From contig NIVC01002252.1 in the NCBI GenBank assembly GCA_002269645.1, positions 1 through 64,000 on the forward strand: a stretch of 64,000 nt of DNA, written 5' to 3'. Position 1 is the first letter of the stretch; each line of letters begins with the position of its first letter. The DNA comes from Macrostomum lignano (taxonomy: Eukaryota). Shown piece after piece: positions 17,776 through 64,000 of this stretch. The translations under genes were made by a program, and so were the position numbers. A model generated the notes under the pieces. It was not told the origin of the DNA and did no database searches. It was given only the letters and a program-made list of their open reading frames with translations.

Positions 17776-18808
17776 ATGTCTGATAAGTTAAACAGCGGAA
17801 ATTTCAAACTGACATTTGCACTTTTGAATCTGCAAGTCTTCATCTTGTTGTCATTGGTTTCAGAGTATGTAGCAAATAAAACACTTTTTCCAATGTTTCA
17901 TCCAATTGTACTTAAGAGTTTCTTGTTCCACATTTCAGACACCATGCCGCAAATCACTATTGTGTGAGCGGACTGACGCTGAGTCTGCGACTCGACGATT
18001 TCTACCACAGAGACGAGCTCATCATTCCGCAGCTGTCAGATGAGTCCGAGCAGAGTTTGATGAAGCGCAGGATCTGTAAGTGGGCCGTCAGAGCGGACTC
18101 CAGAAGGAGGGATCTTCAGCTCGTGCTGGAAGGGCGAACAGCGGGTTTTGGGAAAAACCCTGTCAGTTTAAACATTCGCTACTCACCGGGCTCAAAAGGA
18201 TGGGCGGCTGTGTCGCCTGGAATGTTTCGAGTATTTCCGTTGGCAAAAGGGCAAGTCTAATTTTGCTCATGTCATCATTACACTGTTTGCGCAACCTACA
18301 CAGCTGCATGTAGCAGGCCGTATCATACATATAAACGGCATGGCATGCTAAATATAGAGATTTGCTTAAATTTTGTATTGCTTTAATAAATAGACTCGCA
18401 AAACGCGTCATACATGCTATTGCTTGCTTCCATAGCATGATTTCGATTCCATGCAAATTTTTCTTTCCAGAAATCAGTTCAATGTGGAGACAAACTGGGA
18501 TACGAGATATCAGAATAGAAGCATGTCAAACCTGAGGATTGTCCTGCCACTTCCCGGGTTCTGCAGCCGGGAAATGCTCAGCTTCAATAGAAAATGCTAC
18601 GCCGTGAGCTCAGCAAAGCAGAATGCTTCAGCCGCAATGTCCAGCATTGAAGGCGATGCTCAGCTGGCCAGCTTCTCCAGCATGGCTGAGATCAGCGAGC
18701 TCATCGCTGCCAGTGAGTGAGCATCGTCTTAGATTGCAATGTAGGTTATGATTTCGAAATTCAATGATACTTTTCTCATCATATCAGACACCAAAAAGCT
18801 GCAGGAAG
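17776..18808 (+). pseudogene. Family B copy B1 (signal, CUB-like, N-half of CTLD), 3'-truncated and fused to a mariner remnant
   Basis: Exons 17776-17864, 17939-18250 (GC donor), 18471-18712 and 18788 onward match B3; similarity to B3 stops at AAGCTGCAGGA (about 18808). Confidence 0.8.
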
Positions 18809-19673
18809 ACCCACAGCAGTCTGTCAGTGAGCTAGCGGACTGCTTGGAGATTGATTTCGAGACAGTCCATCGCATCCTGACAGAGGATCTCCATCACCGC
18901 AATGTCTGCTCAGTCTGGGTGCCCCGCGACCTCACTGCGGAACAGCGGCAGCTTCTTGTGAACTGCCTCAAGCAGATGCGCAAGGTGCTCAGCAGCCGGT
19001 GCTTGAATGACATCCTAAATTGCCTGGTTGTTGAGGATGAAACCTGGCTCCACCTGGATGGCAAGGGCAGCAAGGCAGGCAATCGCTGCTGGCTGGGCGC
19101 TGGGGACTCCAGGAGGTCCATCTCAGACAAGAAGACCATGCTGCTGGTGGCCTTCAAACAAACGAGTCTCCATCCGCACAACTTCACCAAACACCAACCT
19201 CGATGGCCAGTATTTATCGATTTTGTCCTGCACACTGCGGACCTCTGGCGCACTCTCCAGTCAAATCAAATTCACCTGGAGTAGGTACTGTGGCAGATGG
19301 ACAACGCACAGCCGCACACCTGTAAGGCTGCTTCGGATTTTCTGCCTGGACGGCAAGTGAATCTGCTCTGGCAGTGTCCCTACAGCCTGGACTTCAACTT
19401 ATGCGACAGATTTCTGTTTAAATTGCTGACGGCTGACTTTTCTAAGAGGATTTTTGCAAACCATGAGAGTTCAAACACGTGGCGTTGCACTGGTTCCGGC
19501 AGCTGAAGGAAAAACACTGCAGGCTGAGGTGGAGAAGCTGTATGAGCACTACTGCCAGAGGGCGATTGAGAATGGGGGACTCTGTGTTGCTGAGTGATAC
19601 AGTTTTGTTTATCTGTGATTGCAAGTTCGTCTGTTTTCACATCAGTGGCATTACTTATGACACACCCGAAGTA
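18809..19673 (+). mobile_element. Mariner (DD34D) transposon remnant, 5'-truncated
   Basis: WVPRDL, EDETW, MDNAQPH and YSLDFNLCD motifs, with 34 residues between the 2nd and 3rd Asp; in-frame TAG at 19282; probable right TIR (CATTACTTATGACACACCCGAAG) followed by TA. Confidence 0.88.
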
Positions 19674-20295
19674 CATTACATGTGAATTGCTAAACTCTCG
19701 TATGTAGCTAGATGAAAACGAATTCAAAACCGTACCTACAGCAACTGAAATCAACTATAAGTTTATATTTAGCTTTCACTTGACTATTTTAATTTGAATT
19801 ACTTTTATTTGTGTTTCAAAGTTAATACCTACATGTTTGATACCACAATGCACAATATACCGCAACATGCCTTCACAGGACACTCTAAATTATATACATT
19901 TTTTAATTTGTTAAAATCTGTCCTTTCTAACTGGAAGCAGCTTCTTATTGTAAATAATATCTGGGCAAACGCAGGCTCTTCTGTGTTGTTTATCGGGTCA
20001 CATGACAGCCACCATCCAAGAGTAGAGTTCCTATAGTTTAGTGGTAAAAAACCATAAGCATGCCAAAACTTGCATGGAAACCACACAGACATAAGGAATA
20101 GATTGACTGCTACTGCAGTTCTGGATGCGATCTGATATGATGGGGCTGAAGTTCTGCAGCTGCCGAACTTCTACAAGCTATATTTAAGACAGTTAATATA
20201 AAATTAAATACCAAAGACATCCAGTTTTAAATTTTCAAATACAAGCTAACAAGCAAGAAGCAAAAAGGTAATCATACTAGCGTATTTAAAAAACT

Positions 20296-23200
20296 ATGAA
20301 AAGTACGCTTTGGCAGTTGCTGCCTATGCTGCTGAGCATGCGAGTTGCTGCATCACTGGACTGCTCCGCTGTAAATCGCACGGGTGAGTCAGCTGCTGTT
20401 AGGGGCAGCTCAAAGACCAGCAATGCAAGGCTGCAAATACTTTGCGATAAATTTTTCAGTCACAGTGCAGCTGAGCAGGGCTGACGTTCTGCGCACCTGG
20501 CAACCCAGCGGTGCGCACTGCCGTTGGTGGGAGAGTCTGCAGTCAGAGACAAACCGTTTCCCTGCTGCTGTGCGGTCCGGGCCTCGGTGGCTTGTGATGC
20601 AGCTGAGGCAGCCGATGATGCTGGAGGTGGTGAGCGTTCGAGACTGGGGTGAGTGACGCTGACCGACTCATTCTCATGATGCATGATGAGGCAGAGGTAG
20701 TCTGGGACTCAAAGTGTGAGACAGTGTGAGACCAGCCAATAACTAGCACTCTGAGACAGTGTGAGGACCAGATACTGTAGCATTCAAGCACTCTGAGACA
20801 GTATGAGGACCAGCTACTGTAGCATTCAAGCACTCTGAGACAGTATGAGGACCAGATACTGTAGCATTCAAGCACTCTGAGACAGTATGAGGACCAGCTA
20901 CTGTAGCATTCAAGCACTCTGAGACAGTATGAGGACCAGCTACTGTAGCATTCAAGCACTCTGAGACAGTGTGAGAGCAGCTACTGTAGTCTTCAAGCAC
21001 TCTGAGACAGTGTGAGACCAGCTACTGTAGCCTTAAAGCACTCTGAGACAGTGTGAGACCAGCTACTGTAGCCTTAAAGCACTCTGAGACAGTGTGAGAC
21101 CAGCTACTGTAGCATTCAAGCACTCTGAGACAGTGTGAGACCAGCTACTGTAGCATTCAAGCACTCTGAGACAGTGTGAGACCAGCTACTGTAGCATTCA
21201 AGCACTCTGAGACAGTGTGAGACCAGCTACTGTAGCATTCAAGCACTCTGAGACAGTGTGAGACCAGCTACTGTAGCATTCAAGCACTCTGAGACAGTGT
21301 GAGACCAGCTACTGTAGCATTCAAGCACTCTGAGACAGTGTGAGACCAGCTACTGTAGCATTCAAGCACTCGTATTGCAGGTTTCTTGTGGCACCCAGCA
21401 CCTCCAGGGGTCGGAGTCGGAGTCTCGAGCCTCCCGCTGGAGCTGCAGCTCGAGGATCCGTGCAGCGCCAGCGGGGATGCCTTCTGCATCGATCGCTTGC
21501 GGAGTCATGATGGCTCCAGTGGCACCGCCGTGGTGAGTGAAAGAGAAAATTTGCTGTTTGTACGAGCGCATGCTGCACACTGTCTTCCACATTGTGAAGA
21601 ACTCTGACATTCTGAGCACCCCTCTCACTAGCAGCCAGCGGCCTTCTTTCTGTTTAGCGGCTACATGTGCCGGCAGCCTCTCCAATGGAACGGTCTCCTT
21701 CTGCATGGTGAGGTCTTTCAATTTAGTGCTTTGATTCGCGGGTTATTGAGTTCGTTTTGCAGCGCCGCGAAACCGCTGTTCGCTGCTCAGTGCAGTGAAA
21801 CGGCTGATGGCGCTTCATTCGCAGTAAAAAATATTCGTCCCACCGCACCCTCAGGCCGCACGGCCCCAATGCAGCTGAAGGAGACCAGAAACTCATTTTG
21901 CCTGAACTGCGAGCCCCTCACATGGAGACCCGGAGATCGCATTGGCTTCTCAGTGAGCAGCTGCGGCTCCCAGACTCCAGGCTGCTCAGTTCGACTCGCG
22001 GATGGCAGCAGGCGGGAGGCTCAGTTGGTGAGCGACTGGCCGGTCTTGCCTGACAGATTTTCCACTTTGAGTCTGAGATCTCAGGGCATTCTGTGAATTT
22101 TAGCTGATCTCAAGACCGGGCGCTGGTCGGATTCGAGTCACCCATTTTGAGTACTTTGTGGAGGAGAGCGACATTCCGCGGACTCTGACCTGCTGGCAGG
22201 GGGACCCAGCGGCTCTGCAGATTGAGAGGAAAATCGCTGTAGCATGCAAGTCTTGGGCAGCCAATTCTGGTATCCAAGGCTTCGTATAGTTTTGCACCTG
22301 CTTAAACCTCTTGATTTTACTTTTATTTCAGCTTCGATGGAAGCTGTACTCTATCGGTCTCTCCGGTGTGGGTCTCAGGCAGGAAGATTTTCTTAGAAGC
22401 CGAAGCGCAGCGATTCTTTCCGGAGCCCAGGATTCAGTGTTCGATCAGGGCGGTGACGGAGCAGCCTTTGAAAGTTGAGAGTCAGGTGAGGACAGGTGCA
22501 CTGTCTTTGAGTGGGCAAATTTGGGTGAGCAGGACCGCTAACAGATCACAAATTGGGGTTGAAAATCTGACCTCCACGTGATCCACCCAATTTTCCAGTC
22601 ACTTGCCAACCCAAACACTTTGCGCGCGACCTACATGTATCCTCACACAGACACTTAAACTTTGGGTGCCACTTAGTTTACATGTATATCTTGTATATTC
22701 TTCAACTTTCAGAGCCGGTCTGTAGTGAAGGACAATGAAAACAGGGTTCTGCTGTCAGTTCGCTCAAGGTTCAGCTTTCACGCCTCGCTCTCGATGGTTG
22801 GAGGCCGAATTCTGTGCTGGGTGAATCTGACTGGAGGCGAAAATCGTGTTAGAAGTACTGTGAAGATAAAATTAAATCACAATATAACGTTGATAAGCGG
22901 TGAGAAATTCTAAAAATAATTAGATTTACATATTTTATAGATATGAGCCACCCAGCCACCCCTCACCTAGCCACCCCTCACCCAGCCACCCCTCACCCAG
23001 CCGCCCCTCACCCAGCCACCCCTCACCCAGCCACCCCTCACCCAGCAACCCCTCACTCAGCCACCCCTCACCCAGCCACCCCTCACCCAGCCACCCCTCA
23101 CCCAGCCACCCCTCACCCAGCCACCCCTCACCCAGCCACTCACTCGCACTGCAGAGCCGTGCCAGACGGCTGTTGATCTGGGCTCGAGTCCGCACTGGGA

Positions 23201-24701
23201 GGTGGGCCAGACCCGCCACATCGCAGTGACCTCCAGCGCCTGCAGCATCTGGAATGTGAGCCACAGCTGCCGGCTGCTGCAGGCTGATGGCGCTTCACCC
23301 GTGCCGCTCCGCAGAGTTGAAGTACGCTTGCACTGAGACTGGCCAAAGTGCTCAGAGAAGTGCAGAGCCTCACCTGTCCCCATCTGCACCCTCATTCGCA
23401 TTGCAGCAGAGCAGCTTCAGCAGCGCTCACCAGCTGCAGGTGAGCAGGTCGATGGCTCACCAGAACTGGTCGGTTCGCTGCAGCGTCAACCAGTCAGGTG
23501 TGGTGTATGATAAGGCTGAGAGTCTGGAGCAGCTGCGACCGCCGATTTTCTGTGAGTGCCGAACAGTGAATGAAGCGAGTCAGCTGTGAACGCTTTGCTT
23601 GAATGCGATTTCCAATTTCACTGCAGACCCGGCAAGCATTCAGGTAAATGGCAGCATTGAGAGCTCGCGACTGCACCTGGCTGTGGCTGCCTCCGACGCT
23701 CGGCCTCCGGTGACATCCGTGAAATGCTTAATTTCGAGTTCTATTGTGAGCAGTAGCTTTGATATTTGTTGTTGGTTTTTCTGCTTGAAATTATTCGCAA
23801 AAATTCGAACAATTTATTTTCTTCCTGTCTCCAGCAAGTGACTCTGCACAAGCAAAGCGATGCCAACACGTGGAGTTTTGATAGCGATGGAGGTCCAATG
23901 AATGTTTTTTACAGAAGGCAGCACCTCGCTGCATCGAACATCACTATCTACTGCACTGCCCATCAGGTGTCAACGAATGGCAACCTGATATTTCAGAGCC
24001 ACAGCTCGAAACAAATTTACGTAGCTGAATCGATTGGCACTACGGATCTGCCAAGCACTCAATCAGTGAAGGCTGTTGAGTCAAAGGGTATGGGGCTTGA
24101 GTCGCACTCACTGTTCTAACATGTTTATTGAGAACATCGGAGCTAATCAACCTTCAAGAAACACACTAGCTGGTAAAATTATTGCTGCAGGTCCATTCTC
24201 AACCGTGTACGCCTTTCCACTGTCGCACCTGCTCGTTGCGTCCGCTTCGGTGATAGCCGTAATTGTGATGGTTGGCATTGCCTCAGCTGGGATTGCCTGG
24301 GTAAATAATACCTTTTCTGGATAGGTACAGTGGTAGCTATCACTGTCAGTCAGTCAGTCAGTCAGTCAGTCAGTCAGTCAGTCAGTCAGTCAGTCAGTCA
24401 GTCAGTCAGTCAGTCAGTCAGTCAGTCAGTCAGTCAGTCAGTCAGTCAGCTGTTACCCTTGCAGAGAGTGTCCCGGTCCAGATTAGTCGCACTGGCTGCT
24501 CAGCGCAGAGGCGGCGGTGCTCTTCAGATGCAGCCGCTGGCAGCCGCGACCTCCGCGGGCGCCGGCAGCAGCGCGTACGACTACCCGTCCACGAATGCGA
24601 CAGTTCAGGGCAGCAGGAGCCACAGCGAGGCCGGAGAGTCCAACAACATACCCAGTGTCTACCTGGTGCTCACTCCGTCGAGGAGGTCTCAGCAGCAGTA
24701 G
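20296..24701 (+). CDS. Family A receptor A4: signal peptide, discoidin-like domain, 4 Ig-like domains, TM, ITIM-like tail (about 740 aa)
   Basis: 14 GT-AG, phase-consistent, stop-free exons: 20296-20383, 20460-20648, 21381-21532, 21635-21707, 21825-22027, 22104-22249, 22332-22485, 22713-22899, 23155-23321, 23407-23551, 23627-23745, 23835-24087, 24191-24300, 24465-24701. TM LLVASASVIAVIVMVGIASAGIAW; tail AYDYP and SVYLVL. Confidence 0.8.
20712..21370. repeat. Diverged 41/42-bp version of the intron-2 minisatellite, about 16 units
   Basis: Unit GCACTCTGAGACAGTGTGAGACCAGCTACTGTAGCATTCAA; the 5' units are 42 bp (GAGGACC). Confidence 0.95.
22948..23142. repeat. 15-bp tandem repeat (CCCAGCCACCCCTCA) x about 13, A4 intron 8
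   Basis: Direct tandem units; reads (PATPH)n on the + strand. Confidence 0.95.
24345..24450. repeat. (CAGT)n microsatellite just upstream of the last A4 acceptor
   Basis: Perfect tetranucleotide run. Confidence 0.97.
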
Positions 24702-25489
24702 CAGCTGGTCAGCAGCTTTGAGCCGAGGCAGCAGAGCTGAGAGATGCTGAAAGCAGGGAATAAACTGATTTTTTCTACGACCTACTTTGAAGTTATTTTC
24801 CACTCAAAAACTACAATATAAAGCTTTTAGTTCGTCAATTTTATAGTTCGACTGGTTATCAGAGTTTGTAGCGGCGAAAAAAGGATTCTTGTGAGTCTTT
24901 AAGTGAAACTTTTTTGCTTCTTGAAAGGATTATTTTAACAATAGCATTAATTTATGATAAAAATTAAATACAATAAAATAAATTATTGCAGAAAATTGTC
25001 CTTCCAGACAAAAAGAGAAGAAAATAAAATTTGATCAAGAAAGGAGACAGATTCTATCGCAAAATCAAAGGTGCACAAACTCAAAATTCGAGACTGAAAG
25101 CTTATTTAATAATTTCAGCTGAAGGTGCGTGTTGAACATTTTGTCTGTTACCCTCTGTCAGTAGCAGGTAGCCTGATTATGCCAGTGTAGTTTTCGTCTA
25201 TGATGACAGCAGAAACTTCAATAGTTTCGATCGGTAGCGGCAGTTGTGTGTCCTTTTTTGTTTTTTTGTTTGTCTGGTTCAGTAACGCAGTGCAGAATTA
25301 TACATGCGAATGTTTTATATGAGCAGTGCAACAACAAGCCTGAACGTGTCTCAATATTTTGAGTTCTCGGAGAACACGGTGCTTACTTAGACTTAGCTGC
25401 AGGGTGGTCCGTAGACACAGCGGGGAGGCGAGGGTCGCCCATTCCGCTAGCCCCTGAAGGCCCGCAGATAGGCAGAGGCGTGGGGCCGG

Positions 25490-28400
25490 TCAGGGTGGTC
25501 CGCCGGTCCGTCCTGCAGCGTGATCTTCCGTAGGGAAGAAAGTGGCTCGTCTAGTCGCCCGAAGGAACTGGATGAGCCGTGGGATGCTGTCGGGCTGGCA
25601 GACCTCGTCAATGGACGGGTTCGGCCCGAGGTAGCGTAGCCGGTCTCTGTTAAAGAAGGGGCAGTGACAGACAAAGTGCTGAGCATCTTCATTGTCGCAC
25701 TCGCAAAAGGGGCAAATTTCGCTCTCGAGGTCGCCTCGGAGGAAGCAGTGCCTGGCGAGGTAGCCATGGCCGGTAAGGGTCATGACAAGGGCTCGAATAT
25801 CCTTCCGATTCTGGTTCAGAAGGATGTTTCTGAGCCTGTGAGACGGGCAAGGAACCGCGGCACGAGATTGCCGGCAGTTTTGGGTGCCCGCCCATCTGTC
25901 CCTGTGGAGGGAGTCAGCCCAGTCGTCGATCTGACGATTGATGACTGTCAAGGGCATAGGGACCAGGGGGGCAGGGCCGAAGAAAGAGCCAGAGCCGCCC
26001 CTCTTGGCGAGGGTGTCTGCCAGCTCGTTCCCCGGAAACCCTGCGTGCCCTGGGATCCACTTCAGCCTGACAGTATTGCTTCTGGCCAGGAGGTTGAGCT
26101 GCCGGGCGCAGTCGGCGACTGTCCGGGAGTTCGTTGTGGTGTGGCAAAGGGCCTGTAAGGCCGCTTGGCTGTCGGAGTGGATGACAATAGTCTTTCCTCT
26201 CGTAACCTTGGCGTTCAGCTCTGCAGCGCAAGAGCTGATGGCAAGGACTTCGTTCTGGAAGACTGTGGAGAGTCTACCAGTGTGCTGGGCATGCGTGGCA
26301 ATTACGCGGCCGTTGATGATGGTGCAGACCCCAAAACCGGCGCGACCGTCTTTGATGGATCCGTCCGTGTAGCAATGGACCTCCTGGAAATTCCAGTGGT
26401 CATTGGCAGCATCCCTAGAGGGGATGGTGACCTTGTAGCGCTGAAAGAGGTTGAGAGTGCGGGGTTCGCCGTCAGATAGGACGTGGAGCCCGCCGCTGTC
26501 TCTCAAGTCCTTGAGGCAGAGGTCAGCGTGGGGCAGAAGCTTGCGCTTAGCCATGGCCCTATGGGGCTGGATTCGAATACCAGCGTCAGCTAGACGGCGG
26601 GCAGTCTTAGCCGCTTCCCTGCGGACAAAGATGTCCAGCGGAGGAATGTTGAGGAAGGCGTTGAGGCCATCGTAAGGAGCAGACGGAGGGGCGCTCATGA
26701 TCGTGCGACATGCGCGCCCTTGTGCTCTCCTGAGAGCCTCTAGACAGGTCTTTATCTGCAGGGCGCTAGCCCAGATCAGGCCGCCATACGAGATAGCGGG
26801 CCTAACCATTGCAGTGTAGATCCACCAGAGGCGCTTGGGGGTGAGCCCCCAGGTGGTGCCGACAGCCCTGCGCAGTTGCGCGAGGACTGTGAAGGCCTTT
26901 TTGGCTTTTGTTTGAACGTGGGGTGACCAGTTCAGCCTGTGGTCCAGGGTAATACCCAGACATTTAGTCTGCTTGCAGAAGGGGATTTCCCTTCCGTAAA
27001 GCGTGAGCGGCCGAATCTGCCACTTGGTCCTGCTGGTGAACATGATCGCTGCGGTCTTAGTCTCAGAGAGCCTTAAACCACAGCGGTCCGCCCATTGCTC
27101 AGCGGCGTAGATAAAGTTCTGAAGAAGGTCCCTGAGGGTATCAGGGGACGGACCAGATGCCACCGCGGTGACATCGTCCGCATATCCAACTTTCAGAATG
27201 GGGTCAGGCCGAACATCCCGGAGGAGCTCATCGATGACCATATTCCAGAGAACTGGAGACAGCACCCCACCTTGCGGGCTACCTTTGCAGACGGGGACCG
27301 TCCTCTGGTAGCCCAGCAGACTGGCGGTGGCCGTGCGATGGCTGATCATGTACATGATCCACTGGTGAGATGTGAGTGCGTTTGCCTCTCACAAAGAGCT
27401 CTTCGGAACGCCTCAAAGAGGACGTTATCGAAGGCGCCAATGATGTCCAGGAAGATCCCCAGAGCAATGCCATTACCAAGCACGACCTTCTCGAGTTTAT
27501 CGACCAGGACGTGCAGCGCGCTTTCAGTGGAGCGACCCGCCCGAAAAGCGTGCTGGTTCTCGCTGAGAGGTGCGCCAAAGCACCAGTCTCTCCATCAGCT
27601 TGACCAGGGAGGAGGTCAAGCTGATCGGTCTGAAGGATTTGTTAGAATGGTAGTCCGGGCGGCCTGGCTTAGGGATAAAGATCACCTTTGCCTCGGTCCA
27701 TGCCTGTGGGACATAACCAAGCGAGCGTGATGCATGCCCGAAGAAGGCTGCAAAGTTTGCGCAGGAAGCCTGGGCATTTAACCGCCTCTCTTAGGAGGGT
27801 CGGTACAATGCCGTCGGGTCCTGGGGCTTTGAAAGGCTTGAAGGAATTTGCCGCTCTCACGATGCAGTCCTCCGTGATGATAGAGGCAGCCAGCGCGTGA
27901 CCTCCCTCCGAGTGATCCGGAGTGGTCTGGTTAGCTGGCTCGTTGGGGAAAAACGCAGTGAGCATTACATCAAGCGTTTCCCCTGGGTTGTCCGTGGACG
28001 TACCGTCGGTGCGTTTGACCGAGGAGAGCTTAGACATTTTGTCCAGCGTGAGCGCTTTCACAACTCTGGAGGTGGGGCGTGAGCCCTCTAGCTCCTCACA
28101 GTATTGTCGCCATTTTTGAGCCTTTGCATTCCTAACCTGCCTTTTAAACTCATGGATTGCTTCATGATAGGCGTTGGTCTGCAGGGCTCTTAGTTTTAGT
28201 TGCTCTGCGGTGGAGTCTCTTAGCCCTGCGACGGAGGTTGCCGAGCTCGGGATTCCACCACGGCGCCGATTTTTTCCCTTTATAGGCTTTTAAAGGGCAG
28301 GACGCCTCAAAGGCGGCGGTTAGCGTCTCTGTCAAAACAGTCGCGCACTCATCCGCCTCTCGGCACGACGTGATCGTGAATGGTTGGCCAGGAGACCGAT

Positions 28401-29180
28401 GGAATTCCTTCAGGGCGAGCCCGAAGGTTTCCCAATCAGTATTTCTGGCGTTCCGTCTCCACGTAACACGAGTTGCGCTACGCGCGGCCATTAGGTTGAA
28501 GGAGATGAACTTGTGATCCGAGAGTGAGGACACTGGAAGCACCCGCCACGCCCCAATACTCTGGTAGAGTCTGGGCGTTGCGAGCGTAGCGTCGATCACC
28601 TCCGACCACCGTCCGTTGTCAAAGGTAGGGGTGGACCCAGAGTTGCAGAACTCGAGGGTCGTAGAGGCAACGTAGGCTAGGAGGTCTTCGCCTCTCTGAT
28701 TAATGCCAGTGCTGCCCCAGTGAGTGTGGTGGGCGTTGATGTCGCCGGCAACCATGAGCTCGTAGTTTTACCAGAGCTACCAGAGCAGAGCTCTACCAGC
28801 GTAGCGAGGGCTCTGGGGACGACCGCAGCATCGCCTGGTAGGTAAACCGAGGCAATGAGGGTGGTCTTCCCAGGAAGAAGGTCCTCGGATTGGATGACGC
28901 AGATGTCCCTGTTGGACAGGTCCGATCTGAGCCACGCACTGAGCGTTTTGCTCGCAAAGATGCAAGCTCTGGGAGGCTGGTTGGCCTCGCGAGGGTAAGT
29001 ATAAAAACAATTGTAGCCAGCAGGGGCGTTTTGAGGCTTACCTCTGAGAGTCCAGGGTTCCTGGACGAGGATGAGCCCCGGCTTGTCGAGCTCGGCGTAA
29101 CGCATAAGGTTGACCGAGGCTGCGACGCAGTGCTGCAGATTAATCTGCAGGCAATGGATTCCCTGGTTGCTGATCATTAT
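25490..29180 (-). pseudogene. LINE ORF2 (endonuclease, reverse transcriptase, RNase H), split by several frameshifts
   Basis: Fragments 29183-28677, 28755-28162, 28061-27669, 27578-27279 and 27355-25490 lie in changing frames. Confidence 0.88.
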
Positions 29181-29454
29181 CACGCAGTTGGGGAATCGTT
29201 GAGCAGGTCATCCTCCTCCTTTTCAGTGGTGGGTGACCCGCAGACCTCCATGGGAGTTTCAGCGTCCTCAGCAGTTAGGGTGGCTGTGGAGTCCTCCGCG
29301 GACGTGAGCCCAGCGTGGACGTTACCGTCGCCTCCCCTGCGTGCTTCGGTGCTGTCACTGCCCGTCCCCTCTGCCTCGTCGGTCAGGTCGATGCGGGTGG
29401 CGCCAGCCTCCTGGTGAGTCACAGACTCGAACCAGTCGGTCGGAGCCTCCCCGC

Positions 29455-33682: not shown

Positions 33683-33777
33683 AGAACTTCGAATTCCATT
33701 TTCTGTTGGTCGGTCTACTGGTATCGGCATTGCAGTGAGTAGTGCGAATTTCATCAAGTTTGTTCTCGGAAAGATAC

Positions 33778-33812
<35 letters not shown>

Positions 33813-33837
33813 GAGACAGACAGACAGACAGACAGTC

Positions 33838-33874
<37 letters not shown>

Positions 33875-53889: not shown

Positions 53890-56800
53890 ATGAAAAATTC
53901 ACTTTGGCATCTGCTGCCTCTGCTGCTGAGCATGCGAGTTGCTGAATCATTGAACTGCTCCGCTGTGAATCGCACGGGTGAGTCAGTGGCTCTTTAGGAG
54001 CAGCTCAAGCCTACATGTAGCAAAGCAATAAGGCTGCAAATATTTAGCGATACATTTCCAGTGACAGTGCAGCTGAGCAGGGCTGACGTTCTGCGCACCT
54101 GGCAACCCAGCGGTGCGCACTGCCGTTGGTGGGAGAGTCGGCAGTCAGAGACAAACCGATTCCCTGCTGCTGTGCGGTCCGGGCCTCGGTGGCTTGTGAT
54201 GCAGCTGAGGCAGCCGATGATGCTGGAGGCGGTGAGCGTGCGAGACTGGGGTGAGTGATGTTGACCGACTCATTCTCATGATGCATGATGAGGCAGAGGG
54301 AGTCTGGGATACAGTGTGTGAGACAGTGTGAGACCAGCTAGCATCTAATTAGCACTCTGAGACAGTGTGAGACCAGCTAGCATCTAATTAGCACTCTGAG
54401 ACAGTGTGAGACCAGCTAGCATCTAATTAGCACTCTGACACAGTGTGAGACCAGCTAGCATCTAATTAGCACTCTGAGACAGTGTGAGACCAGCTAGCAT
54501 CTAATTAGCACTCTGAGACAGTGTGAGACCAGCTAGCAGCCAAGCACTCGTGTTGCAGATGGCCAGTGGCTCGCAGCAGCTCCGGTCGGCTCGCCCGTGT
54601 CAGCGGTCGGAGCCTCGAGCCTCCCGCTGGAGCTGCAGCTGGAGGATCCGTGCCGCGCCAGCTGGGAGGCCTTCGGCAGCAGCGACCGCTGGAGGCAGGT
54701 CGGACATGGCGAAGCGGTAATGCGGGTGCAGCAAATGTTTGATTTTATTGCCGCCTCAAGCAGATCATGTTGCACTTCAGGTTTTGACAACGTTTATCCG
54801 GCTACTCAGCGAGAGTTCGCTTGCTTGGCAGGCCATAAATATCTCAGGAAAGTTTGCTAATTTCACTTTGCTGATCTCATTTAGTCTGTTTTCTATTGAC
54901 AATAAATATTTCCAGGCCGCCATGCATTGATGTGCATCAACATGAACCTGTTCAGTAACCTTCTCTTCCATCGGCTCGGCCTCTTCGTCAGCGAAGACGC
55001 TCAACATTCGATTTCTTGGATCAACCTCTTTGTAGATAGCTGCAGCTTCGGCAATGCCGCCTGCTGGCTTTCCGATTCTTCTGGAAGAATTGTCAGCGCA
55101 ACGCTGGTGAGCGGGCCATCAAGGACCTTGGTTTTCAAGCATGCATTCGATTGTGCATTCAGTAGGCTGAGGAAGTACTCAACTGGCTTTAGGTTGGCTC
55201 GTCTCGAGCTGATGAAAGTGGGATTCGGACTCACAAGCTCGAGTTTGGAGCTCTTCCTGATGACCACGGAAAGCTGCTGCAGTGCGGCTTGAGCACTTCT
55301 CAAGGCGCTGTTCTGCTCAAGAAGCTGCTGTTGTGGGAAGGTGCTCTTCTTTTGCTTTTCTTTGTTTTCGCAGCGGTGATTGAACTGCAGATCATATTGC
55401 AACTGGAGTTTAGTTTAGGGATGGATGGAGACGCTGATGGATCGCAGACTCAGGTGTACCCTCGACAGTCTCAGATTAAGTTTTAAGCTTTTTATTTAAC
55501 GCCATGTTAAAAATATTTATTTTTAGTTTCAGTCAAAGCTCTGCACATCTCAGCTTTGCCAGTCCTGGTTGCTGGGCAGCTGGCAAAGCTCAGCGTGTTC
55601 TCAGATTCTTTGCCTGAGGCTCAGCACCGCTGCTTCATCGGGAGGCCGGGGTCGCAGCGAAGTCGAAACCTCACTGCTCTGAGCACTGTAATTTCCTGAT
55701 AATTGCGAATGCATTGCCTGCGCGTTCCATGAAATGAACTTTCCTTCTTGATTTTCAATTTCAGAGCGAGTCAAAAACCATCGACAGCTGGAACAGAACA
55801 CTCGTCAGAGTTCGCTCAGAGTTCGGTTTTAATGTATCCATGGCTGATCAAAATTCCATCATCATGTGCAAAGGAACTGCTGGATCAGAAAGGAAGGAGG
55901 CTACTTGGTATCAAAGCATTTCAGAAATCAGTGGTATGAATATTTAAAAGAATTTTGGGGAACTATGATAATAAATCAAAAAAGAAGAATAACTTTAAGA
56001 GGATTTTTTCTTTATTCGCTGACATCTTTGGCAACCTAGCATGCGCCGTGTAGTCCTCATTGGCCCTTAAAGTCCTCTTGACTGCCCTAACAAGCCGGAA
56101 CATAAGTATGCTTCATCAGTCTGTGCTTCATCTTTCAGAGCCCTGCGAGACAGCCGTGGACTTGGGACCGGAGAAATTCTGGCTGGTGGGGCAGATCAAG
56201 CTGGTTCAGGTGATCTCTAAGCGCTGCAGCATCTGGAATGTGAGCCACAGCTGCTGGCTGAAACTGAATGGTGATGCTGCAGTCAGCACACCGCTTCAGA
56301 AAGTGCAAGTGAGTGAAAATCACCTTTGGTAAATTCTTAATGAACAAACTTCATTCAGGTCTAGAATATGTCAGCTGTCTTCACCTTTGCACCAATTTCG
56401 GTTACAGCAGGGTGAGTTCAACAGCACTCACGAGCTTCGGGTATTCGAGGCGATGACCCGTCAGAATTGGCAGGTTTTGTGCAGCGTCAATCAGTCTGGA
56501 GTTGAGCACAGTGACTCAGAAAGCAGTCTGAGCAGTGCACCAGCTGTTTTTTGTGAGTCATTTAAAGTTTTTAACGTTTCTGTTCAATTTGAATCGAAAA
56601 AATCAAAAGCCGAATCTTTCTTGTCATTGGAAAAACCTCAAGGCAAAGCCAGCAGGTCAACGCTTGAACTCGCGTTAGCCTACGTCTTTAACAGCCATTC
56701 TGAAGTTCACGTGCGTGCAGTTTATCAAAATAAAAACCAAAACCTACTACTTCCTGTGCACAGCATCAACTGCTCAGTTGCAGATGAGGCATCGTCAAAG

Positions 56801-57795
56801 CTTAGCAATATCAGCAAGACTGAATGGTACGGTTTACTGAAACTGAGATGGAGCCGCTCATCTGTGAATGTCTGCTGCTCCAGTTACCAAACTTATGCTG
56901 GATTGACTGTCTTTAAGTCTCTGCAGTGCAAATCTTTAACCCAACAGCCCGTTGGTAAAGACGGTGAGCAGATGTTTGTGGTTACTAATCTACAGTCATC
57001 TTCATTAACAGATGAGCAGCATTTGACAAGATTCTAATAAAGACTTTCTTAGCTCTGTTAATAGCCAGCCTTCATACCGGTAGGATTTAAAAAATGGAAT
57101 GTCTGGTTCTTTTAACAGAGTCGTCTTAGATTGAAACAGGAAATTCTCAACCGGAAATAATTAGAATATGTTATCATGACTTAAATGTAATACACTCGTG
57201 GGACACAATACTTCGTTGACGATTTGCAGCTCATAGCGACGATCGCTTGACAATGTTTTTCTCGCTTCTATTGGCTTCTGTACTGGCTTCACTAGTTGTG
57301 GGCTTTCTTCTGTCTGCAATATACCACAAATTTGATATACTTTTTACTTGCGAGAGAAATTCGGTGAGTCATATAGAAGCATGAAATTCAATTTTAAGTC
57401 TGCCCCTAAGGGTTCCACGTCACCATTCGTACCATTTTTGTACTATGCTCAAACATAACCCATGTATAGTTCAATTTCCCTAGTATGTGTTCTTAGTGCT
57501 TCGACAATGACATGGTAATTTTTAATTGATACTTCGGGAACGGATGTATTTTCAGCCACGGAGAGGTCACGCTGGACAATGTCCAAGTCAGCACAATGCA
57601 GGTCAGGCCGTCCCAATGCGAATACGGAACAACTTCGCAGTGCAAAGTGACTCACGTGGCAGCAGTGAATACGACTACCCAATAACTGAGCAGTCAGGAA
57701 GCTACGAAAATGAGCAGTTGGGTCACGAAGGTGCCTACACGCAGGTGCTGCTGGCTCCTTTACAGGGATTACTGAATGAAGGTCAATCAGACTGA
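53890..57795 (+). CDS. Family A receptor A7, paralogue of A3 (about 726 aa)
   Basis: Exons 53890-53977, 54062-54250, 54559-54716, 54781-54847 (GA donor), 54916-55106, 55193-55340, 55527-55687, 55765-55933, 56139-56308, 56408-56552, 56643-56963, 57230-57363, 57556-57795; stop-free; tail EYDYP, SYENE, AYTQV. Confidence 0.75.
54312..54540. repeat. 39-bp minisatellite, about 6 units, A7 intron 2
   Basis: Same unit as in A1. Confidence 0.95.
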
Positions 57796-59542: not shown

Positions 59543-61233
59543 ATGTCTGATAAGTTGAACAATGGAATTTTCAAACTTTCTTTTGCGCTTCTGCATGTGA
59601 AAGTCTTCATCTTGTTGTTATTGGTTTCAAAGTAAGAACCGAACAAAATACTTTTTTTTAAAATATTGCATCCGATTGGACGTCAAACCTTATTGTGCCG
59701 AATTTCAGACACCATGCCGCAAATCACTATTGTGTGAGCGGACTGACGCTGAGTCTGCGACTCGACGATTTCTACCACAGAGACGAGCTCATCATTCCGC
59801 AACTGACAGATGAGTCTGAGCGAAGTTTGATAAAGCACAGGACCTGTAAGTGGGCCGTCAAAGCGGACTCCCGAAGGAGGGATCTTCAACTCGTGCTGGA
59901 AGGGCGACCAGCTGGTTCTGGGAAAAACCCTGTCAGTTTAAACATTCACTACTCGCCAGGTTCAAGAGGATGGGCGGCTGTGTCGCCTGGAATGTTTCGA
60001 GTATTTCCGTTGGCAAAGGGGCAAGTTTTATTTTGCTGACGTCATACAGTGTTTGCATGTAGCAGGTCATACCTATATAGATAAACGGAATAGCACATGC
60101 TAAATATAGAGCTTTGCTTTCATTTTGCTTAAAACGCGTGTAATAAAAGTGAGCCACTAAACACGTCATACAAACAAAATAATGTCTTGCTTGGTGCCTT
60201 AGGATGATATCGATTCTAATGAAAATTTTCTTTCCAGCAATCAGTTCAATGTGGAGACAAACTGGGATACGAGATACCAGAATAGAAGCATGTCAAACCT
60301 GAGGATTGTCCTGCCACTTCCCGGGTTCTGCAGCCGGGAAATGCTCAGCTTCAATAGAAAATGCTACGCCGTGAGCTCAGCAAAGCAGAATGCTTCAGCC
60401 GCAATGTCCAGCATTGAAGGCGATGCTCAGCTGGCCAGCTTCTCCAGCATGGTTGAGATCAGCGACTTCATTGCTGCCAGTGAGTGAGCATCGTCTTAGA
60501 TTAAAATATAGGCTATGATTTCGAAATTCAATAATACTGTTTTCATCATTTCAGACAGCGAAAAGCTGCAGGAGTTTCCCTACAGAAGGCCCCTGAGCCT
60601 GGGCCAGCCGGTCCGTCTCGGGATGTTTCTGAACGCATCCGCTGCCACAATGCTGTCCTTAGTCAAGAGTGACAGCGGCTGCCTGCTGCTACAGCCTGTG
60701 ACAGATTTCAAGGACTTTCTGTAAACTTTTACTTTATCTTTATTTTGTTCTTAAAAATGAAAGAATGACAGAAAGAGTATTAATAATTTTTCTTCAGACT
60801 ATCGGACAAAGTGGCGGGACCATGCGTGTCGCTGAGTGTGACCGAGTCAGAAACAGCGGTTGTCGAGCTCGTTAACTGCAGCAGCCCGATGCTGTCGCTG
60901 CTGAGCTTCCCGGAGACTGCGCGCTCCGTGCCAAGCTCAGTGAAGTGCAGGGATATGGAGCTTGAGAATCTTATTCGTCTGAAAAGCTGTCATCAAGAAA
61001 CAGCCTCAGCTACTTCCACAGTAACTGTCAATGCTCCAATACAACCCGTTTTTTTCGACGAATCCCATGCCTCAGATTTTAGTTTTCAAATCCTGATTTT
61101 GGCCTTGTGTTTGACTTTCCTGCTGATTTCGGGCATCGCATACTTTGTTGTCGCAAAGTCTGACTCTAGTAATACTCGCGAAGTTCTCAAAGTATTTGTT
61201 CGCCGAGATCTTAAAGGCATTGAAAATTTATAA
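59543..61233 (+). CDS. Family B receptor B3: signal peptide, CUB-like domain, degenerate C-type-lectin-like domain, stalk, TM, short tail (about 414 aa)
   Basis: Exons 59543-59631, 59709-60020 (GC donor), 60238-60479, 60555-60720, 60798-61233; stop-free. CTLD-like C..MLSFNRKCYAVS...AQLASFSS...E, RLG, CVSL...NC; TM ILILALCLTFLLISGIAYFVVA. Confidence 0.78.
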
Positions 61234-62294
61234 TCTATACGAAGAAAAAACTTGCTGCATTTTTACTAACGGCGTAGCTGTGATGGCTAAATAAATTCAG
61301 TAGGTGAGCCTAGTCGTCCGAGTACTGTAGACTAGAGAATCAAACTTCTACCCGAGATCCCTAGCTCGTCAGCCGCAAAACTAATCTTGTCTAGGTATAG
61401 TAGCTCTATGCAGCGTCTCTAAAAATAATAAATGTTATTTTTTCTTCTGAACCTTTATCAATTCACATGATGATGTCTTTTTTAATGATAGCAAGTACGT
61501 AGTAATTAAACAAATTGCAAAATTTAAATACAATTTAAATTGTTTACGCTGCGGTCTGGGATTCTTGTTACTATGGCTCTGACTATGATTTCTATGACGA
61601 GTAGTTTGAGCCAAAATAACTGAGACGGCCGATTTCAGCTCAATCTGATCTGGAGATGTTTGAGAACGGGTGCTCTTTGCTAGATTGACTGAGTCAGTCT
61701 GCTAAATCTGAGTAGTTCGGTTATCTTATGAAAGTGTCTATTCAGGTCGGAGATTACTTAGTGCAATAGAGCTAGGGCGAGAGAGCGAGAATCTTATGTG
61801 TCCAGTCCTATTCTTTGTAAAAACAACTAAAAGCACAGGTTGGCCATTGATGCTGCCTGCAGCAGCCACTGTTTTACGTCGCAATTAACATTTTCGTCTC
61901 TGTCAGTTTTCTGCGTACATTTTTTGTCTCTGCAATGCATGACAATCTGGATAGAGTGTTACGGTCTAGCTATATATATGTACAGATAAAGCATATTGAG
62001 TCTTTTCTAACTGTGTAAGTACTCATTTGCGGTAGCTAACTACCTTAAATTTAATTATTTTTTCGGACTTACAAGCTACCATTTTCTGTCTCAGCTGGGC
62101 AAGACCGAATCTGGAGCTAAATTTTAACTGAGGCAATTCCAAAGACCAAGGGAATTCCACACTATATATATATAAAGTCCATATATATGCATAAGCCATT
62201 AATTTTTACCTTTGAATTGTCTTATCTGTTCTAATTGCACTAATTGGTTTGAATCTCAGAGTTTTGAAAACACAAGACCTAACTAGAAAGCGAC

Positions 62295-64000
62295 ATGCCA
62301 GAAGAAGTTGGCAGATCACTGTGGTCAGCATCAGTTCTACTTCTCTGCTTGTTCTCAGTCTGCAAGCTTAAACCGTAAGTTCAGAAAAGCTCTTTTCCCT
62401 TTAACTGTTGCTGAGAAGCTCGAACGAGCGTATATTTTTTGAAAAAAAGAACATTATTCTAGTTATTTGTGATAATATTTTTGATATACGTCATAAGTTA
62501 TATACGATATATGACATACATGTATTTGATATATGTCATACGTCTAGTTTATGTTTGCGCTAGTAGTTTTGATTAAGTTTATTTGAATTGCTGTGACTCT
62601 TAGAATCTGACGTGCATGTAATAATCTAGCGTACGCGCTATAACAAAAAGTAGATAAATGCCACAAATTAAGTATCGAATCGTTATAAAAGTTTCAAAAA
62701 ACCAACCTGCTCGTCAAAAACCTGACAGGTGCCTATCAGAGAATCATTACTGCCCAATGGCCACCGAATTTACGGTTCTGCTTGATGATTACAGCCACAG
62801 AAATGCGACATTCATTCCGAGAAGTCAAGATGGAATTAACGATGGTCCTATTGTAACGGGGCGCTGCAAGTGGACCGTTAAAATCAAAGCGCCAGAAAAT
62901 CAGCAAGTTTTGGTGCAAAGACTTCCCGGAATTCCAGCTAAAAATTCTATCAAGCGAAATTCTAGCCTCCTACAGAATGTACTAATCTCCAACCAAAAAG
63001 GACTCAACGACGAGATACGTAGCGCTTCATTTTCTGTGCATTCAGCGCAAAAAAGGTAAGCATGTACAAAAAACTCCTATCAAAAAATTTCCTAAATAAT
63101 TTTTGCGCATCTTTCTTGTCATAATTTAGAAGCAAGTTTGAAATTTCAATCACCTGGGAGGCGGGCAGCTTAAAATCTTACGGCGACTTAGACAATGTTA
63201 GAGTCATGCTACCAATACCTGGATACTGCAGTCGCACCATGCTGGCCTTCAATGGGAAGTGCTATGCTATGAGTGCAGTTGAACAAAATGTCACCGACGC
63301 CATGTCCAGCGTCAGGGGCGATGCTCAGCTGGCCAGCTTCTCAAGCATGACTGACATCTGCGAGTTCGTTGCAGCCAGTGAGAAAATGTTTGGTTCAAAT
63401 GTCAGAGCCGGTGTTTTATTTCATTTATTGTACACATTGAAAATAAAAAAATAACTTTTTCAGACAAAGCAAGAGCAAATGAGTATCCATACAGACGGCC
63501 TCTCCATCTGAGCCAGCGGGTCCGTCTCGGCATGTTTCTCGATTCAGCCGATGCGACAGTGCTGTCCGTGGTCAGGAGTGACAGCGGCTGCCTGCTGAAG
63601 CCTGTAGCTAACTTGGATGAATTCAGGTGAGACTCAAGCTCAATTATTGATTTACTCGCATACCCGATTGTAATAAAATGTATCTTCGAAACTTTTTCAG
63701 AGTAACTGGCGGAGTGACAGGTTCATGTCTGTCTCTCAGAGCGACCGAGTCAGACACGGTGATAGTCGAGCTCGGCGACTGCAGCAGCCCGATGCTGTCG
63801 CTACTGAGCTTCCCGGAGACTGCGCGCTCCGTGCCGAGCTCAGCGCACTGCAATGGCAGCGAGCTGATTGGCCTGATCCACCAACTGCTCAGTCCTGCTG
63901 CAAGTCTGTTCTCTGCAAGTCTGAGAATTTCTGCTGTCACGACTAGTCCAGATATTAAAGCTGCAGCCATACCATTTGAACTCATAATTGTTTCTGGGTG
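62295..64000 (+). CDS. Family B receptor B4, partial (runs off the window)
   Basis: Exons 62295-62374, 62729-63055, 63130-63377, 63464-63626, 63701-end; all GT-AG and stop-free; CKWTVKIKAPENQQVLV is CUB-like. Confidence 0.75.

What the first reader, a model, noticed from the sequence alone, without database searches (positions are those of the whole stretch)
17776..64000. Second interleaved family: CUB-like + degenerate C-type-lectin membrane proteins
Seen: four copies sit between A genes in the same orientation; B3 has a short tail with no tyrosine motif. Known: in vertebrates, lectin-like receptors and their ligands are genetically linked (NKR-P1/Clr), and Ig-type and lectin-type receptor complexes play parallel roles. 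Inference: A (signalling) and B (non-signalling) could be co-inherited receptor-ligand or co-receptor partners; the duplication unit kept three A genes and one B gene together.
Basis: partly seen in the sequence, partly recalled or inferred. Interest (0 to 1): 0.7.

Follow-up and report, generated by a model that had tools for sequence, protein, structure and literature searches.

The report
Flatworm CUB–lectin-like membrane gene family
The window is a Macrostomum lignano (flatworm) gene cluster in which four copies of an undescribed, species-restricted membrane-protein family (a CUB-like domain plus a sugar-site-less C-type-lectin-like domain) sit among immunoglobulin-type receptor-like genes; only one or two copies are intact, and a functional partnership with the neighbours is possible but unproven.

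Summary
Four paralogous five-exon genes (B1-B4, + strand) lie among A genes. The source is Macrostomum lignano, not a vertebrate.

**Fold.** Pfam sees nothing, but AlphaFold plus Foldseek give a CUB-like N-terminal domain (moderate support) and a clear C-type-lectin-like fold (top 50 PDB hits all CTLDs). A family profile hits only CTLD chains in the PDB (best E 6e-5). The Ca2+/sugar motifs (EPN/QPD, WND) are absent.

**Integrity.**
- B4 is open to the window end.
- B1 is cut in exon 4 at a mariner-like fragment.
- B2 has lost its ATG and carries a TGA at a conserved Cys.

**Family.** About 40 clusters at 50% identity. All 20 checked are M. lignano.

**Duplication and linkage.** The collinear duplication (A-A-A-B twice) is real. 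A-B adjacency recurs at another contig (A-B-B-A) and in a fused B-B-A gene model. Six other B loci have no A gene within 10 kb.

**Verdict.** This is a birth-and-death cluster of lineage-specific surface-recognition genes. An A-B partnership is neither shown nor excluded. Interest is moderate.

The parts
17776..17864 (+). B1 exon 1 (signal peptide MSDKLNSGNFKLTFALLNLQVFILLSLVSE), GT donor
   Evidence: 84% nt identical to B3 exon 1
17939..18254 (+). B1 exon 2 (CUB-like domain, first part: HHAANHYC...CKW...PLAKGQ)
   Evidence: 90% aa identity to B3
18478..18712 (+). B1 exon 3 (end of CUB-like domain plus first half of the CTLD-like domain)
   Evidence: 95% aa identity to B3
18788..18807 (+). B1 exon 4 stump (N-TKKLQE). 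Similarity to B3 ends at ~18806. The rest of exon 4 and exon 5 are absent from the window, so B1 is a truncated copy.
18808..19284 (+). Mariner-like transposase fragment read in frame from the B1 stump. This is the breakpoint of B1.
   Evidence: Resemblance to mariner transposases is my reading of the sequence; Pfam gave no hit.
33682..33734 (+). B2 exon 1 (QNFEFHFLLVGLLVSALQ). CAG stands where the close relative P0001 has the initiator Met, and there is no in-frame ATG upstream.
33740..34260 (.). (CAGA)n/(GACA)n microsatellite filling B2 intron 1
34318..34635 (+). B2 exon 2 (CUB-like)
   Evidence: 83-95% identity to P0001/P0006
35209..35450 (+). B2 exon 3
35994..36141 (+). B2 exon 4
36526..36970 (+). 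B2 exon 5 (CTLD end, stalk, TM, 17-aa tail). It carries an in-frame TGA at 36554-36556 where P0001 and all relatives have the conserved Cys (GGD*VSL versus GGDCVSL).
59543..59631 (+). B3 exon 1 (signal peptide)
59709..60024 (+). B3 exon 2 (CUB-like domain, first part)
60245..60479 (+). B3 exon 3 (CUB-like end, LPLP linker, CTLD-like strands beta0/beta1 and helices)
60555..60720 (+). B3 exon 4 (CTLD-like middle: PYRRPL...VRLGMF...SGC)
60798..61233 (+). B3 exon 5 (CTLD-like end GPCVSL...NCSS...LLSFPE, stalk, TM FQILILALCLTFLLISGIAYFVV, 26-aa tail, stop). The complete ORF is 413 aa.
62295..62374 (+). B4 exon 1 candidate (MPEEVGRSLWSASVLLLCLFSVCKLK, GTAAGT donor, correct phase)
   Evidence: Inferred from phase, hydrophobicity and the donor site only.
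62729..63055 (+). B4 exon 2 (CUB-like)
   Evidence: 98% identity to P0028
63130..63377 (+). B4 exon 3
63464..63626 (+). B4 exon 4
63701..64000 (+). B4 exon 5, open reading frame to the end of the window. TM and tail are not in the window.
12254..16212 (+). A3 (Ig-like-named type I TM gene; tail SSEYDYP...AYTQVL). It is the upstream neighbour of B1, with a ~1.5 kb gap. Ends are approximate.
20296..24701 (+). Ax (a different A subfamily; tail SSAYDYP...SVYLVL), between B1 and B2
53890..57795 (+). A6 (duplicate of A3), the upstream neighbour of B3 with a ~1.75 kb gap
25447..31126 (-). LINE-type retrotransposon (RT + RNase H, frameshifted) between Ax and B2

Best explanation
**What it is.** B1-B4 belong to a large gene family found so far only in Macrostomum. 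The proteins are single-pass type I membrane glycoproteins with this layout: signal peptide, CUB-like beta-sandwich, LPLP linker, C-type-lectin-like domain (CTLD), Ser/Thr-rich stalk, TM helix, short cytoplasmic tail.

**The CTLD.** It keeps the N-terminal Cys hairpin (CxxxMLxFxGxCY) and the Cys pair at the expected beta3/beta4 positions (GxC...xC). It has lost the alpha1-beta5 disulfide and every Ca2+/sugar-ligating motif. It most likely binds a protein or other non-canonical ligand, as the NK-receptor-type CTLDs do, rather than acting as a Ca2+-dependent lectin.

**How the locus evolves.** The genes sit in a compact, same-strand cluster with A genes (named Ig-like; tails with tyrosine motifs). 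The cluster grows by tandem and segmental duplication and decays by transposon-associated truncation (B1) and point mutation (B2). This is classic birth-and-death evolution of a surface-recognition gene cluster. Here one copy is certainly intact (B3) and one is probably intact (B4).

**Shown versus inferred.**
- Shown: gene structures, lesions, paralogy, the duplication, predicted folds, restriction to M. lignano in the searched databases, and recurrent but non-obligate A-B adjacency.
- Inferred: membrane topology, ligand type, and the role in cell-surface recognition.

With their short motif-less tails, B3 and B4 would act as a ligand or an accessory subunit rather than as signal transducers themselves.
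For: **Gene models.**
- B3 has 5 exons, all GT-AG, and a 413-aa ORF.
- The same exon phases are found in B1, B2 and B4.

**Coding constraint.**
- B1 versus B3 exons: dN/dS 0.30, dS 0.105. Exons are ~95% identical against introns at 72-89%.
- Between subfamilies, omega is 0.38-0.45.

**Fold.**
- The CTLD model (P0025, 36-sequence alignment) has pLDDT 77.5 and pTM 0.75.
- It gives 255 PDB hits at E <= 1e-3. The top 50 are all CTLDs (mincle, DCIR2, CD69, L-SIGN, NKR-P1B, Clr-11, LOX-1, CLEC5A) with probability 1.00 and target TM-scores of 0.51-0.74, mostly about 0.6 or higher.
- The family profile against PDB sequences gives 37 hits, all CTLDs, best E 6.4e-5, aligned in register over the Cys hairpin and helices. 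The shallower profile already gave only CTLDs.
- In the P0001 model the N-terminal domain has pLDDT ~53-83, mostly above 65. Its top hits are mainly CUB domains: neuropilin a1/a2, Neto2, MASP-1, C1r CUB2, TSG-6 and spermadhesin, at E 3e-4 to 7e-3 and target TM ~0.5.
- Several relatives are named 'CUB domain-containing' by UniProt.
- No EPN/QPD with WND occurs anywhere in the family.

**Family size and range.** 40 representative clusters are found among 1.84 billion proteins. All 20 looked up are M. lignano.

**Lesions.**

**Duplication.**

**Tandem arrays elsewhere.**
Against: - No Pfam CUB or Lectin_C match at E <= 1 for B3 or any of 36 relatives.
- CUB support is only moderate. The model is of medium confidence, target TM is ~0.5, and other beta-sandwiches (C. 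perfringens enterotoxin C-domain, cupins) also appear.
- The structures were predicted for relatives (P0001, which is B2-like, and P0025), not for B3 itself.
- No expression evidence exists for the window's own B genes. Their close relatives exist only as ML2 gene predictions (UniRef-only). None is in the NCBI (GCA_002269645.1) annotation.
- Two of four copies are defective, so the local cluster may be decaying.
- Function is entirely inferred.
Confidence: 0.72

Rival explanations
1. A and B are co-inherited functional partners: either receptor and ligand, or a signalling chain plus a non-signalling co-receptor. Selection would keep them adjacent so that matching alleles are inherited together.
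For: - A-B adjacency is seen for three divergent B subfamilies in the window.
- It is seen again in L002 (A-B-B-A, same strand, 1-2 kb spacing).
- It is seen in the fused model P0043 (B-B-A).
- A tails carry YxxL/V-type motifs, whereas the B2 and B3 tails do not.
- UniProt accession adjacency pairs further A and B models. This is a lead only.
Against: - Six of seven other B loci sampled have no A gene within 10 kb.
- Adjacency follows automatically from duplication of a mixed cluster.
- Two of the four local B genes are broken while their A neighbours look open.
- There is no charged TM residue that would suggest subunit pairing.
- Some B relatives have Tyr-containing tails of their own.
- There are no binding or co-expression data.
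- The Ig identity of A was not confirmed here.
Confidence: 0.2
2. The interleaving is a neutral by-product. Two unrelated, fast-expanding membrane-protein families happened to lie side by side. Repeated segmental duplication in the repeat-rich, recently duplicated M. lignano genome then copied them together, with no functional coupling.
For: - A collinear duplication of ~19-23 kb carries A-A-A-B.
- Satellites, a LINE and mariner fragments sit between and inside genes.
- Pseudogenisation of B1 and B2.
- B-only arrays elsewhere show that B does not need A nearby.
Against: - The association is older than the local duplication. It is present with B genes of ~28-44% identity and at a second contig.
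- Chance alone is less likely to place the two families together at several independent sites. The number of independent sites is still small.
Confidence: 0.45
3. A and B are kept together because they are co-regulated. They could share a chromatin domain or enhancer, or be read through as polycistronic, trans-spliced transcripts. No direct contact between the proteins would be needed.
For: - All about 11 genes are on one strand with 1-1.75 kb spacers.
- ML2 gene predictions fuse neighbours (P0045 = A3-B1-Ax of this locus; P0043 = B-B-A; P0023 = B-B-B). Read-through RNA evidence could produce such fusions.
- Spliced-leader trans-splicing is known in M. lignano (my own knowledge, not checked here).
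Against: - Fused models are a common prediction artefact in tandem arrays.
- No transcript data were available.
- A genes carry their own conserved 5' module, which suggests separate promoters.
Confidence: 0.15

Closest known systems
NK-receptor-type C-type lectin-like domains (CD69, NKR-P1/Clr, LOX-1, CLEC5A) in the vertebrate NK gene complex
   Same: - The CTLD fold is among the best structural matches.
- The Ca2+/sugar-binding motifs are lost, implying protein rather than glycan ligands.
- The genes lie in rapidly duplicating clusters that contain pseudogenes.
   Different: - NKC proteins are type II (N-terminus inside the cell) and lack a CUB domain. B is type I with an N-terminal CUB-like domain.
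- In the NKC, both receptor and ligand are CTLDs. Here the neighbour is an Ig-like-named protein.
- Sequence identity is only 12-17% in the Foldseek alignments, and Pfam Lectin_C is not matched.
- The host is a flatworm, so any similarity in locus logic would be convergent.
Caenorhabditis elegans CLEC proteins that combine CTLD and CUB domains (Drickamer & Dodd 1999; from my own knowledge, not checked here)
   Same: - CUB and CTLD occur in one polypeptide.
- The families are large, lineage-specific and tandemly clustered.
- Many members lack sugar-binding residues.
   Different: - The nematode proteins are mostly secreted and are recognisable by Pfam. Domain order and number differ.
- No sequence relative outside M. 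lignano was found for B in 1.84 billion representatives.
CUB-containing single-pass co-receptors with short tails (neuropilins, NETO1/2)
   Same: - These are the best structural matches of the N-terminal domain.
- They are type I membrane proteins with short cytoplasmic tails that work by pairing with a signalling partner.
   Different: - The other domains differ (FA58C/MAM, LDLa, rather than a CTLD).
- Only the first CUB disulfide (C...CxW) is kept in B.
- There is no evidence that B pairs with anything.
Type I single-CTLD membrane proteins (layilin, chondrolectin, CD302)
   Same: Signal peptide, one CTLD, TM and a short tail.
   Different: They have no CUB domain, canonical Cys patterns and Pfam-detectable domains, and they are single-copy conserved genes rather than an expanding family.

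Membership tests
C-type lectin-like domain (CTLD) superfamily | CTLD fold (two helices, two beta-sheets, long-loop region) | tested here: met
   The AlphaFold2 model of family member P0025 has pLDDT 77.5 and pTM 0.75. Foldseek against the PDB gives 255 hits at E <= 1e-3. The top 50 are all CTLDs, with probability 1.00 and target TM up to 0.74.
C-type lectin-like domain (CTLD) superfamily | Detectable sequence similarity to known CTLDs | tested here: met
   The family profile (A3) against PDB sequences gives 37 hits, all CTLDs. The best E is 6.4e-5, over profile positions 160-218 matching CTLD residues ~5-63. The similarity is weak and covers only the N-terminal half.
C-type lectin-like domain (CTLD) superfamily | Pfam Lectin_C (PF00059) at the gathering threshold | tested here: not met
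   No hit at E <= 1 for B3, for any of 36 relatives, or for 5 further full-length relatives.
C-type lectin-like domain (CTLD) superfamily | Conserved cysteines (C0-C0' hairpin, C1-C4, C2-C3) and the WIGL motif | tested here: inconclusive
   Read from alignments.
- The hairpin Cys pair (FCSREMLSFNRKCY) is present.
- The pair at the expected C2/C3 positions (GPCVSL...NCSS) is present.
- The C1 position is Ser (AMSSIEGDAQLASF) and C4 is absent (LLSFPE) in the window copies. A few relatives (P0037 group) have Cys at the C1 position.
- WIGL is replaced by VRLGMF/VRIGLF.
Ca2+-dependent carbohydrate-recognition domains (true C-type lectins) | EPN or QPD motif plus WND motif ligating Ca2+ and sugar | tested here: not met
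   No WND occurs in any family member. There is no EPN or QPD in the CTLD region of B1-B4 or their relatives.
CUB domain | CUB beta-sandwich fold | tested here: inconclusive
   In the P0001 model, residues ~20-150 have pLDDT ~53-83, mostly above 65. The top Foldseek hits are mainly CUB domains (E 2.7e-4 to 7e-3, probability 0.95-1.0, target TM ~0.5). Other beta-sandwiches also appear.
CUB domain | Pfam CUB (PF00431), and four Cys forming two disulfides | tested here: not met
   There is no Pfam hit. Only the first pair is conserved (HYC...CxW[IV]); the second pair is absent. UniProt names several relatives 'CUB domain-containing'. That is a source's label and was not tested here.
Immunoglobulin superfamily (for the neighbouring A genes) | Ig-fold domains detectable by profile or structure | tested here: not met
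   There is no Pfam Ig family at E <= 1 for P0012, P0018 or P0021. The A-family profile against PDB sequences gives no Ig hit. Only UniProt's 'Ig-like domain-containing' names and a C...W...C motif pattern support it. Structure-prediction jobs were exhausted.
NKR-P1/Clr-type linked receptor-ligand gene pairs | Type II CTLD receptor and CTLD ligand encoded side by side, with demonstrated binding | tested here: not met
   B is type I, with an N-terminal signal peptide and a C-terminal TM. The neighbour is not a CTLD. Adjacency is recurrent but not obligate. Binding cannot be tested with these tools.

The most novel reading that the evidence does not exclude
The mixed A/B clusters could be a flatworm-specific, convergently evolved counterpart of vertebrate NK/leukocyte receptor complexes. 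Under this reading, Ig-like signalling receptors and CUB-CTLD surface ligands or co-receptors are encoded as tightly linked, rapidly diversifying pairs. They would mediate self/non-self, mate or gamete recognition in a regenerating, outcrossing hermaphrodite.
Probability: 0.1. Interest if true: 0.8.

Novelty: new variant of a known kind. Interest (0 to 1): 0.38.

Why it matters
M. lignano is a laboratory model for regeneration, stem cells and sexual selection, yet its cell-surface recognition repertoire is essentially unannotated.

- **Hidden domains.** This family (about 40 clusters at 50% identity) is invisible to Pfam. It turns out to be built from two classical recognition folds in an arrangement not listed among known CTLD architectures: CUB, then CTLD, then TM, in type I orientation.
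- **Better annotation.** Recognising the family improves annotation. Several database models are fusions of neighbouring genes or carry unrelated automatic names.
- **Testable candidates.** It gives concrete candidates for RNAi and in-situ screens.
- **Wider payoff.** If the recurrent adjacency to tyrosine-motif receptors reflects real pairing, it would be an independent invention of linked receptor-ligand loci outside deuterostomes.

As it stands, this is an ordinary though previously undescribed lineage-specific gene-family cluster.

Tried and rejected
1. **Pfam scans.** Scans of B3, 36 relatives and the A proteins gave nothing relevant.
2. I used database relatives plus single-exon translations instead (A2, A3).
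3. **First structure model.** The whole P0001 ectodomain with a 25-row alignment gave a useless CTLD part (pLDDT 30-40). A domain-sized query with a deeper alignment fixed this.
4. **Locus look-ups.** The look-up of encoding contigs for the UniRef-only relatives P0001 and P0003 found no record. The closest paralogous loci could therefore not be inspected, and only NCBI-annotated distant subfamilies were reachable.
5. **A-family profile against PDB sequences.** No Ig hit, so 'Ig-type' stays unverified.
6. **Third homology search.** A search with the conserved A 5' module, meant to reach more A loci, returned only short ML2 models without contigs.
7. **Literature.** Searches for Macrostomum with C-type lectin, CUB or immunoglobulin, and for Mlig gene identifiers, found nothing on this family.
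8. **Rejected: vertebrate or NK-complex origin.** All homologues are M. lignano.
9. **Rejected: the 39-nt minisatellite as a coding repeat.** No ORF >= 90 aa lies over the longest array, 44400-46000.
10. **Rejected: B2 as functional.** It has two independent lesions.

Full report
**What the window is.** It is eukaryotic DNA with short GT-AG introns, satellites, a LINE and mariner fragments. Every protein homologue of both gene families comes from the free-living flatworm Macrostomum lignano. One database gene model, P0045 (UniProt A0A1I8G6I6), is a fusion of the window's own A3, B1 and Ax exons. Its segments are 89-100% identical to the window. The window is therefore this locus of M. lignano or a near-identical copy, and the vertebrate framing of the finding does not apply.

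**Checking the observation.** tblastn with the B3 exon peptides finds four paralogous sets of exons, all on the + strand. I built the gene models by hand from homologue alignments and splice-site phases.
- **B3** (59543-61233) has five exons, all GT-AG, giving a 413-aa ORF. It has a signal peptide, four N-glycosylation sequons, a 23-residue TM segment and a 26-residue tail without tyrosine.
- **B4** (62295 to beyond 64000) has the same exon phases and stays open to the window end.
- **B1** starts at ATG 17776, exactly the finding's start coordinate. Exons 1-3 are intact. Exon 4 loses similarity to B3 after 'KLQE' at ~18806 and reads into a mariner-like ORF. No further exon 4 or exon 5 sequence exists in the window.
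- **B2** (33682-36970) has CAG where its close relative P0001 has the initiator Met, with no upstream in-frame ATG. It also has TGA at 36554-36556 in place of the conserved Cys of GxCVSL. A (CAGA)n array fills its first intron.

So four copies exist. One is complete, one is probably complete, and two are defective.

**Gene order and duplication.** The order is A1 A2 A3 B1 Ax [LINE] B2 A4 A5 A6 B3 B4, all on the + strand. Self-comparison shows a collinear duplication, with 1-18806 matching 37580-60573 at 78-96% identity.

**Are they real genes?** B1 and B3 exons 2-3 differ at dS 0.105 and dN 0.031, giving omega 0.30. Introns and upstream DNA are only 72-89% identical, against ~95% for exons. 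That indicates coding constraint after the duplication. Between subfamilies (B3/B4/B2, 35-44% aa identity) dS is saturated and omega is 0.38-0.45.

**What the domains are.** Pfam finds nothing at E <= 1 in B3 or in 36 relatives.

An exhaustive profile search of 1.84 billion representative proteins found 40 clusters. One (P0048) is a spurious bacterial repeat protein. The others I inspected belong to the family, and all 20 I looked up are M. lignano.

With this deeper alignment, the second domain (P0025) modelled well: pLDDT 77.5, pTM 0.75. Its Foldseek matches are uniformly C-type-lectin-like domains. There are 255 hits at E <= 1e-3, the top 50 are all CTLDs, and target-normalised TM-scores reach 0.74. 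Independently, the sequence profile hits only CTLD chains in the PDB: 37 of 37, best E 6.4e-5, in register over the N-terminal Cys hairpin and the helices.

The domain is indeed degenerate.
- The alpha1-beta5 disulfide is gone in the window copies.
- WIGL has become VRLGMF.
- No member has WND, or EPN/QPD at the right place.
- Ca2+-dependent sugar binding is therefore unlikely.

The N-terminal domain was modelled at medium confidence in P0001. Its best matches are CUB domains of neuropilin, Neto2, MASP-1, C1r, TSG-6 and spermadhesin, at E ~3e-4 and target TM ~0.5. Other beta-sandwiches rank further down. It keeps the first CUB disulfide motif (C...CxW[IV]). 'CUB-like' is reasonable but less secure than 'CTLD-like'.

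**The neighbours.** A genes encode ~560-aa type I proteins that UniProt names 'Ig-like domain-containing'. Their tails carry SS[EA]YDYP and YxxL/V motifs. I could not confirm the Ig fold.

**Testing the interpretation: linkage elsewhere.** Seven further B loci could be read from the NCBI assembly GCA_002269645.1.
- **L002** shows A-B-B-A on one strand with 1-2 kb spacers. Its B (P0037) is only ~28% identical to the window copies.
- **P0043**, a fused model, reads B-B-A.
- **L001 and L003-L007** are B-only tandem arrays with no A gene and no A 5' module within 10 kb.
- **UniProt accession numbers** of several A and B models are consecutive-looking. I treat this only as a lead.

The association is therefore older than the local duplication and is recurrent, but it is not obligate. 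It is what one expects from an old mixed cluster expanding by tandem duplication. It neither demonstrates nor excludes a functional partnership.

Some relatives have Tyr- or NPxY-like motifs in their tails. 'B = non-signalling' holds for B2 and B3 but not for the whole family.

**Most likely mechanism.** B proteins are cell-surface recognition molecules. Their CUB-like and CTLD-like ectodomain binds a protein or non-canonical ligand. With short motif-less tails, B3 and B4 would act as a ligand or accessory subunit. The locus evolves by birth and death.
- Confidence in identity, architecture and evolutionary mode is about 0.7-0.8.
- Confidence in a specific A-B partnership is about 0.2.
- Neutral co-duplication (about 0.45) and co-regulation (about 0.15) are the alternatives for the linkage.

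**Novelty.** No paper in the searchable library mentions this family. It is a new, Pfam-invisible variant built from known folds. Interest is moderate unless pairing with A is shown.

Noticed in passing
window 316-1620, 7545-7990, 12254-13190, 20296-21500, 37892-38610, 44417-46010, 53890-54700; also L002 600-1540 and 22900-23560: Every A gene is preceded by the same ~0.9-1.6 kb module.
- Three copies have a signal-peptide-like exon (MKxxLWxLLPxLLSMRVA).
- Next comes an exon-like block, TVQLSRADVLRTWQPSGAHCRWWES...VSVRDWGE, 97-100% aa identical in the six full-length copies (a seventh, at 7545, is partial).
- Next comes a 39-nt minisatellite of variable copy number with no long ORF.
- Last comes the block GQWLAAAPVGSPVSAVGASSLPLELQLEDPCRASWEAFGSSDRWR.

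The module is 84-97% nt identical between A genes whose bodies are only 30-45% aa identical. It is ~95% identical to copies on another contig. This could be concerted evolution of shared 5' exons or promoter, or a repeat element captured by the family. It remains unexplained.
   Followed up: partly
window 25447-31126 (- strand): A LINE-type retrotransposon with reverse transcriptase, RNase H and an upstream ORF1-like region. It is broken into several ORFs by frameshifts. Its GC content is ~58% against ~45% around it. It separates Ax from B2.
   Followed up: partly
window 18808-19284 (+) and 58277-58525 (-): Two mariner/Tc1-like transposase fragments. The first sits exactly at the B1 truncation point. 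The second lies in the A6-B3 spacer.
   Followed up: partly
window 46826-~49000; 10115-11732; 20700-21470; 33740-34260: Four tandem arrays: a large 17-nt satellite (>115 copies) in the A5 region; a 100/102-nt satellite at the corresponding place in the first duplication unit; a 41/42-nt array upstream of Ax; and a (CAGA)n microsatellite inside B2 intron 1. Different satellites occupy equivalent positions in the two duplication units.
   Followed up: no
database models P0045, P0043, P0023 (M. lignano ML2 annotation): Several public gene models are fusions of adjacent cluster genes (A3-B1-Ax, B-B-A, B-B-B). Many family members carry unrelated automatic names such as 'PilZ', 'Exostosin', 'Vitellogenin' or 'Protein kinase domain-containing'. 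The annotation of these clusters is unreliable.
   Followed up: partly
window 7545-9000 (A2) versus 44417-52250 (A5): In the first duplication unit, A2 seems to retain only the 5' module. The Ig-like body and tail found at 50536-52250 in the second unit have no counterpart. The A5 tail exon itself contains a stop (YPTQ*ET, ~52200). The A family therefore also contains defective copies.
   Followed up: no
UniProt accessions of A and B relatives: A and B models have near-consecutive accession numbers: G3U2/G3U7, G5L5/G5L9, J3S4/J3S9/J3T4 and J522/J534. This hints that further A-B neighbour pairs exist in the ML2 assembly. It could not be verified because those contigs were not retrievable.
   Followed up: no
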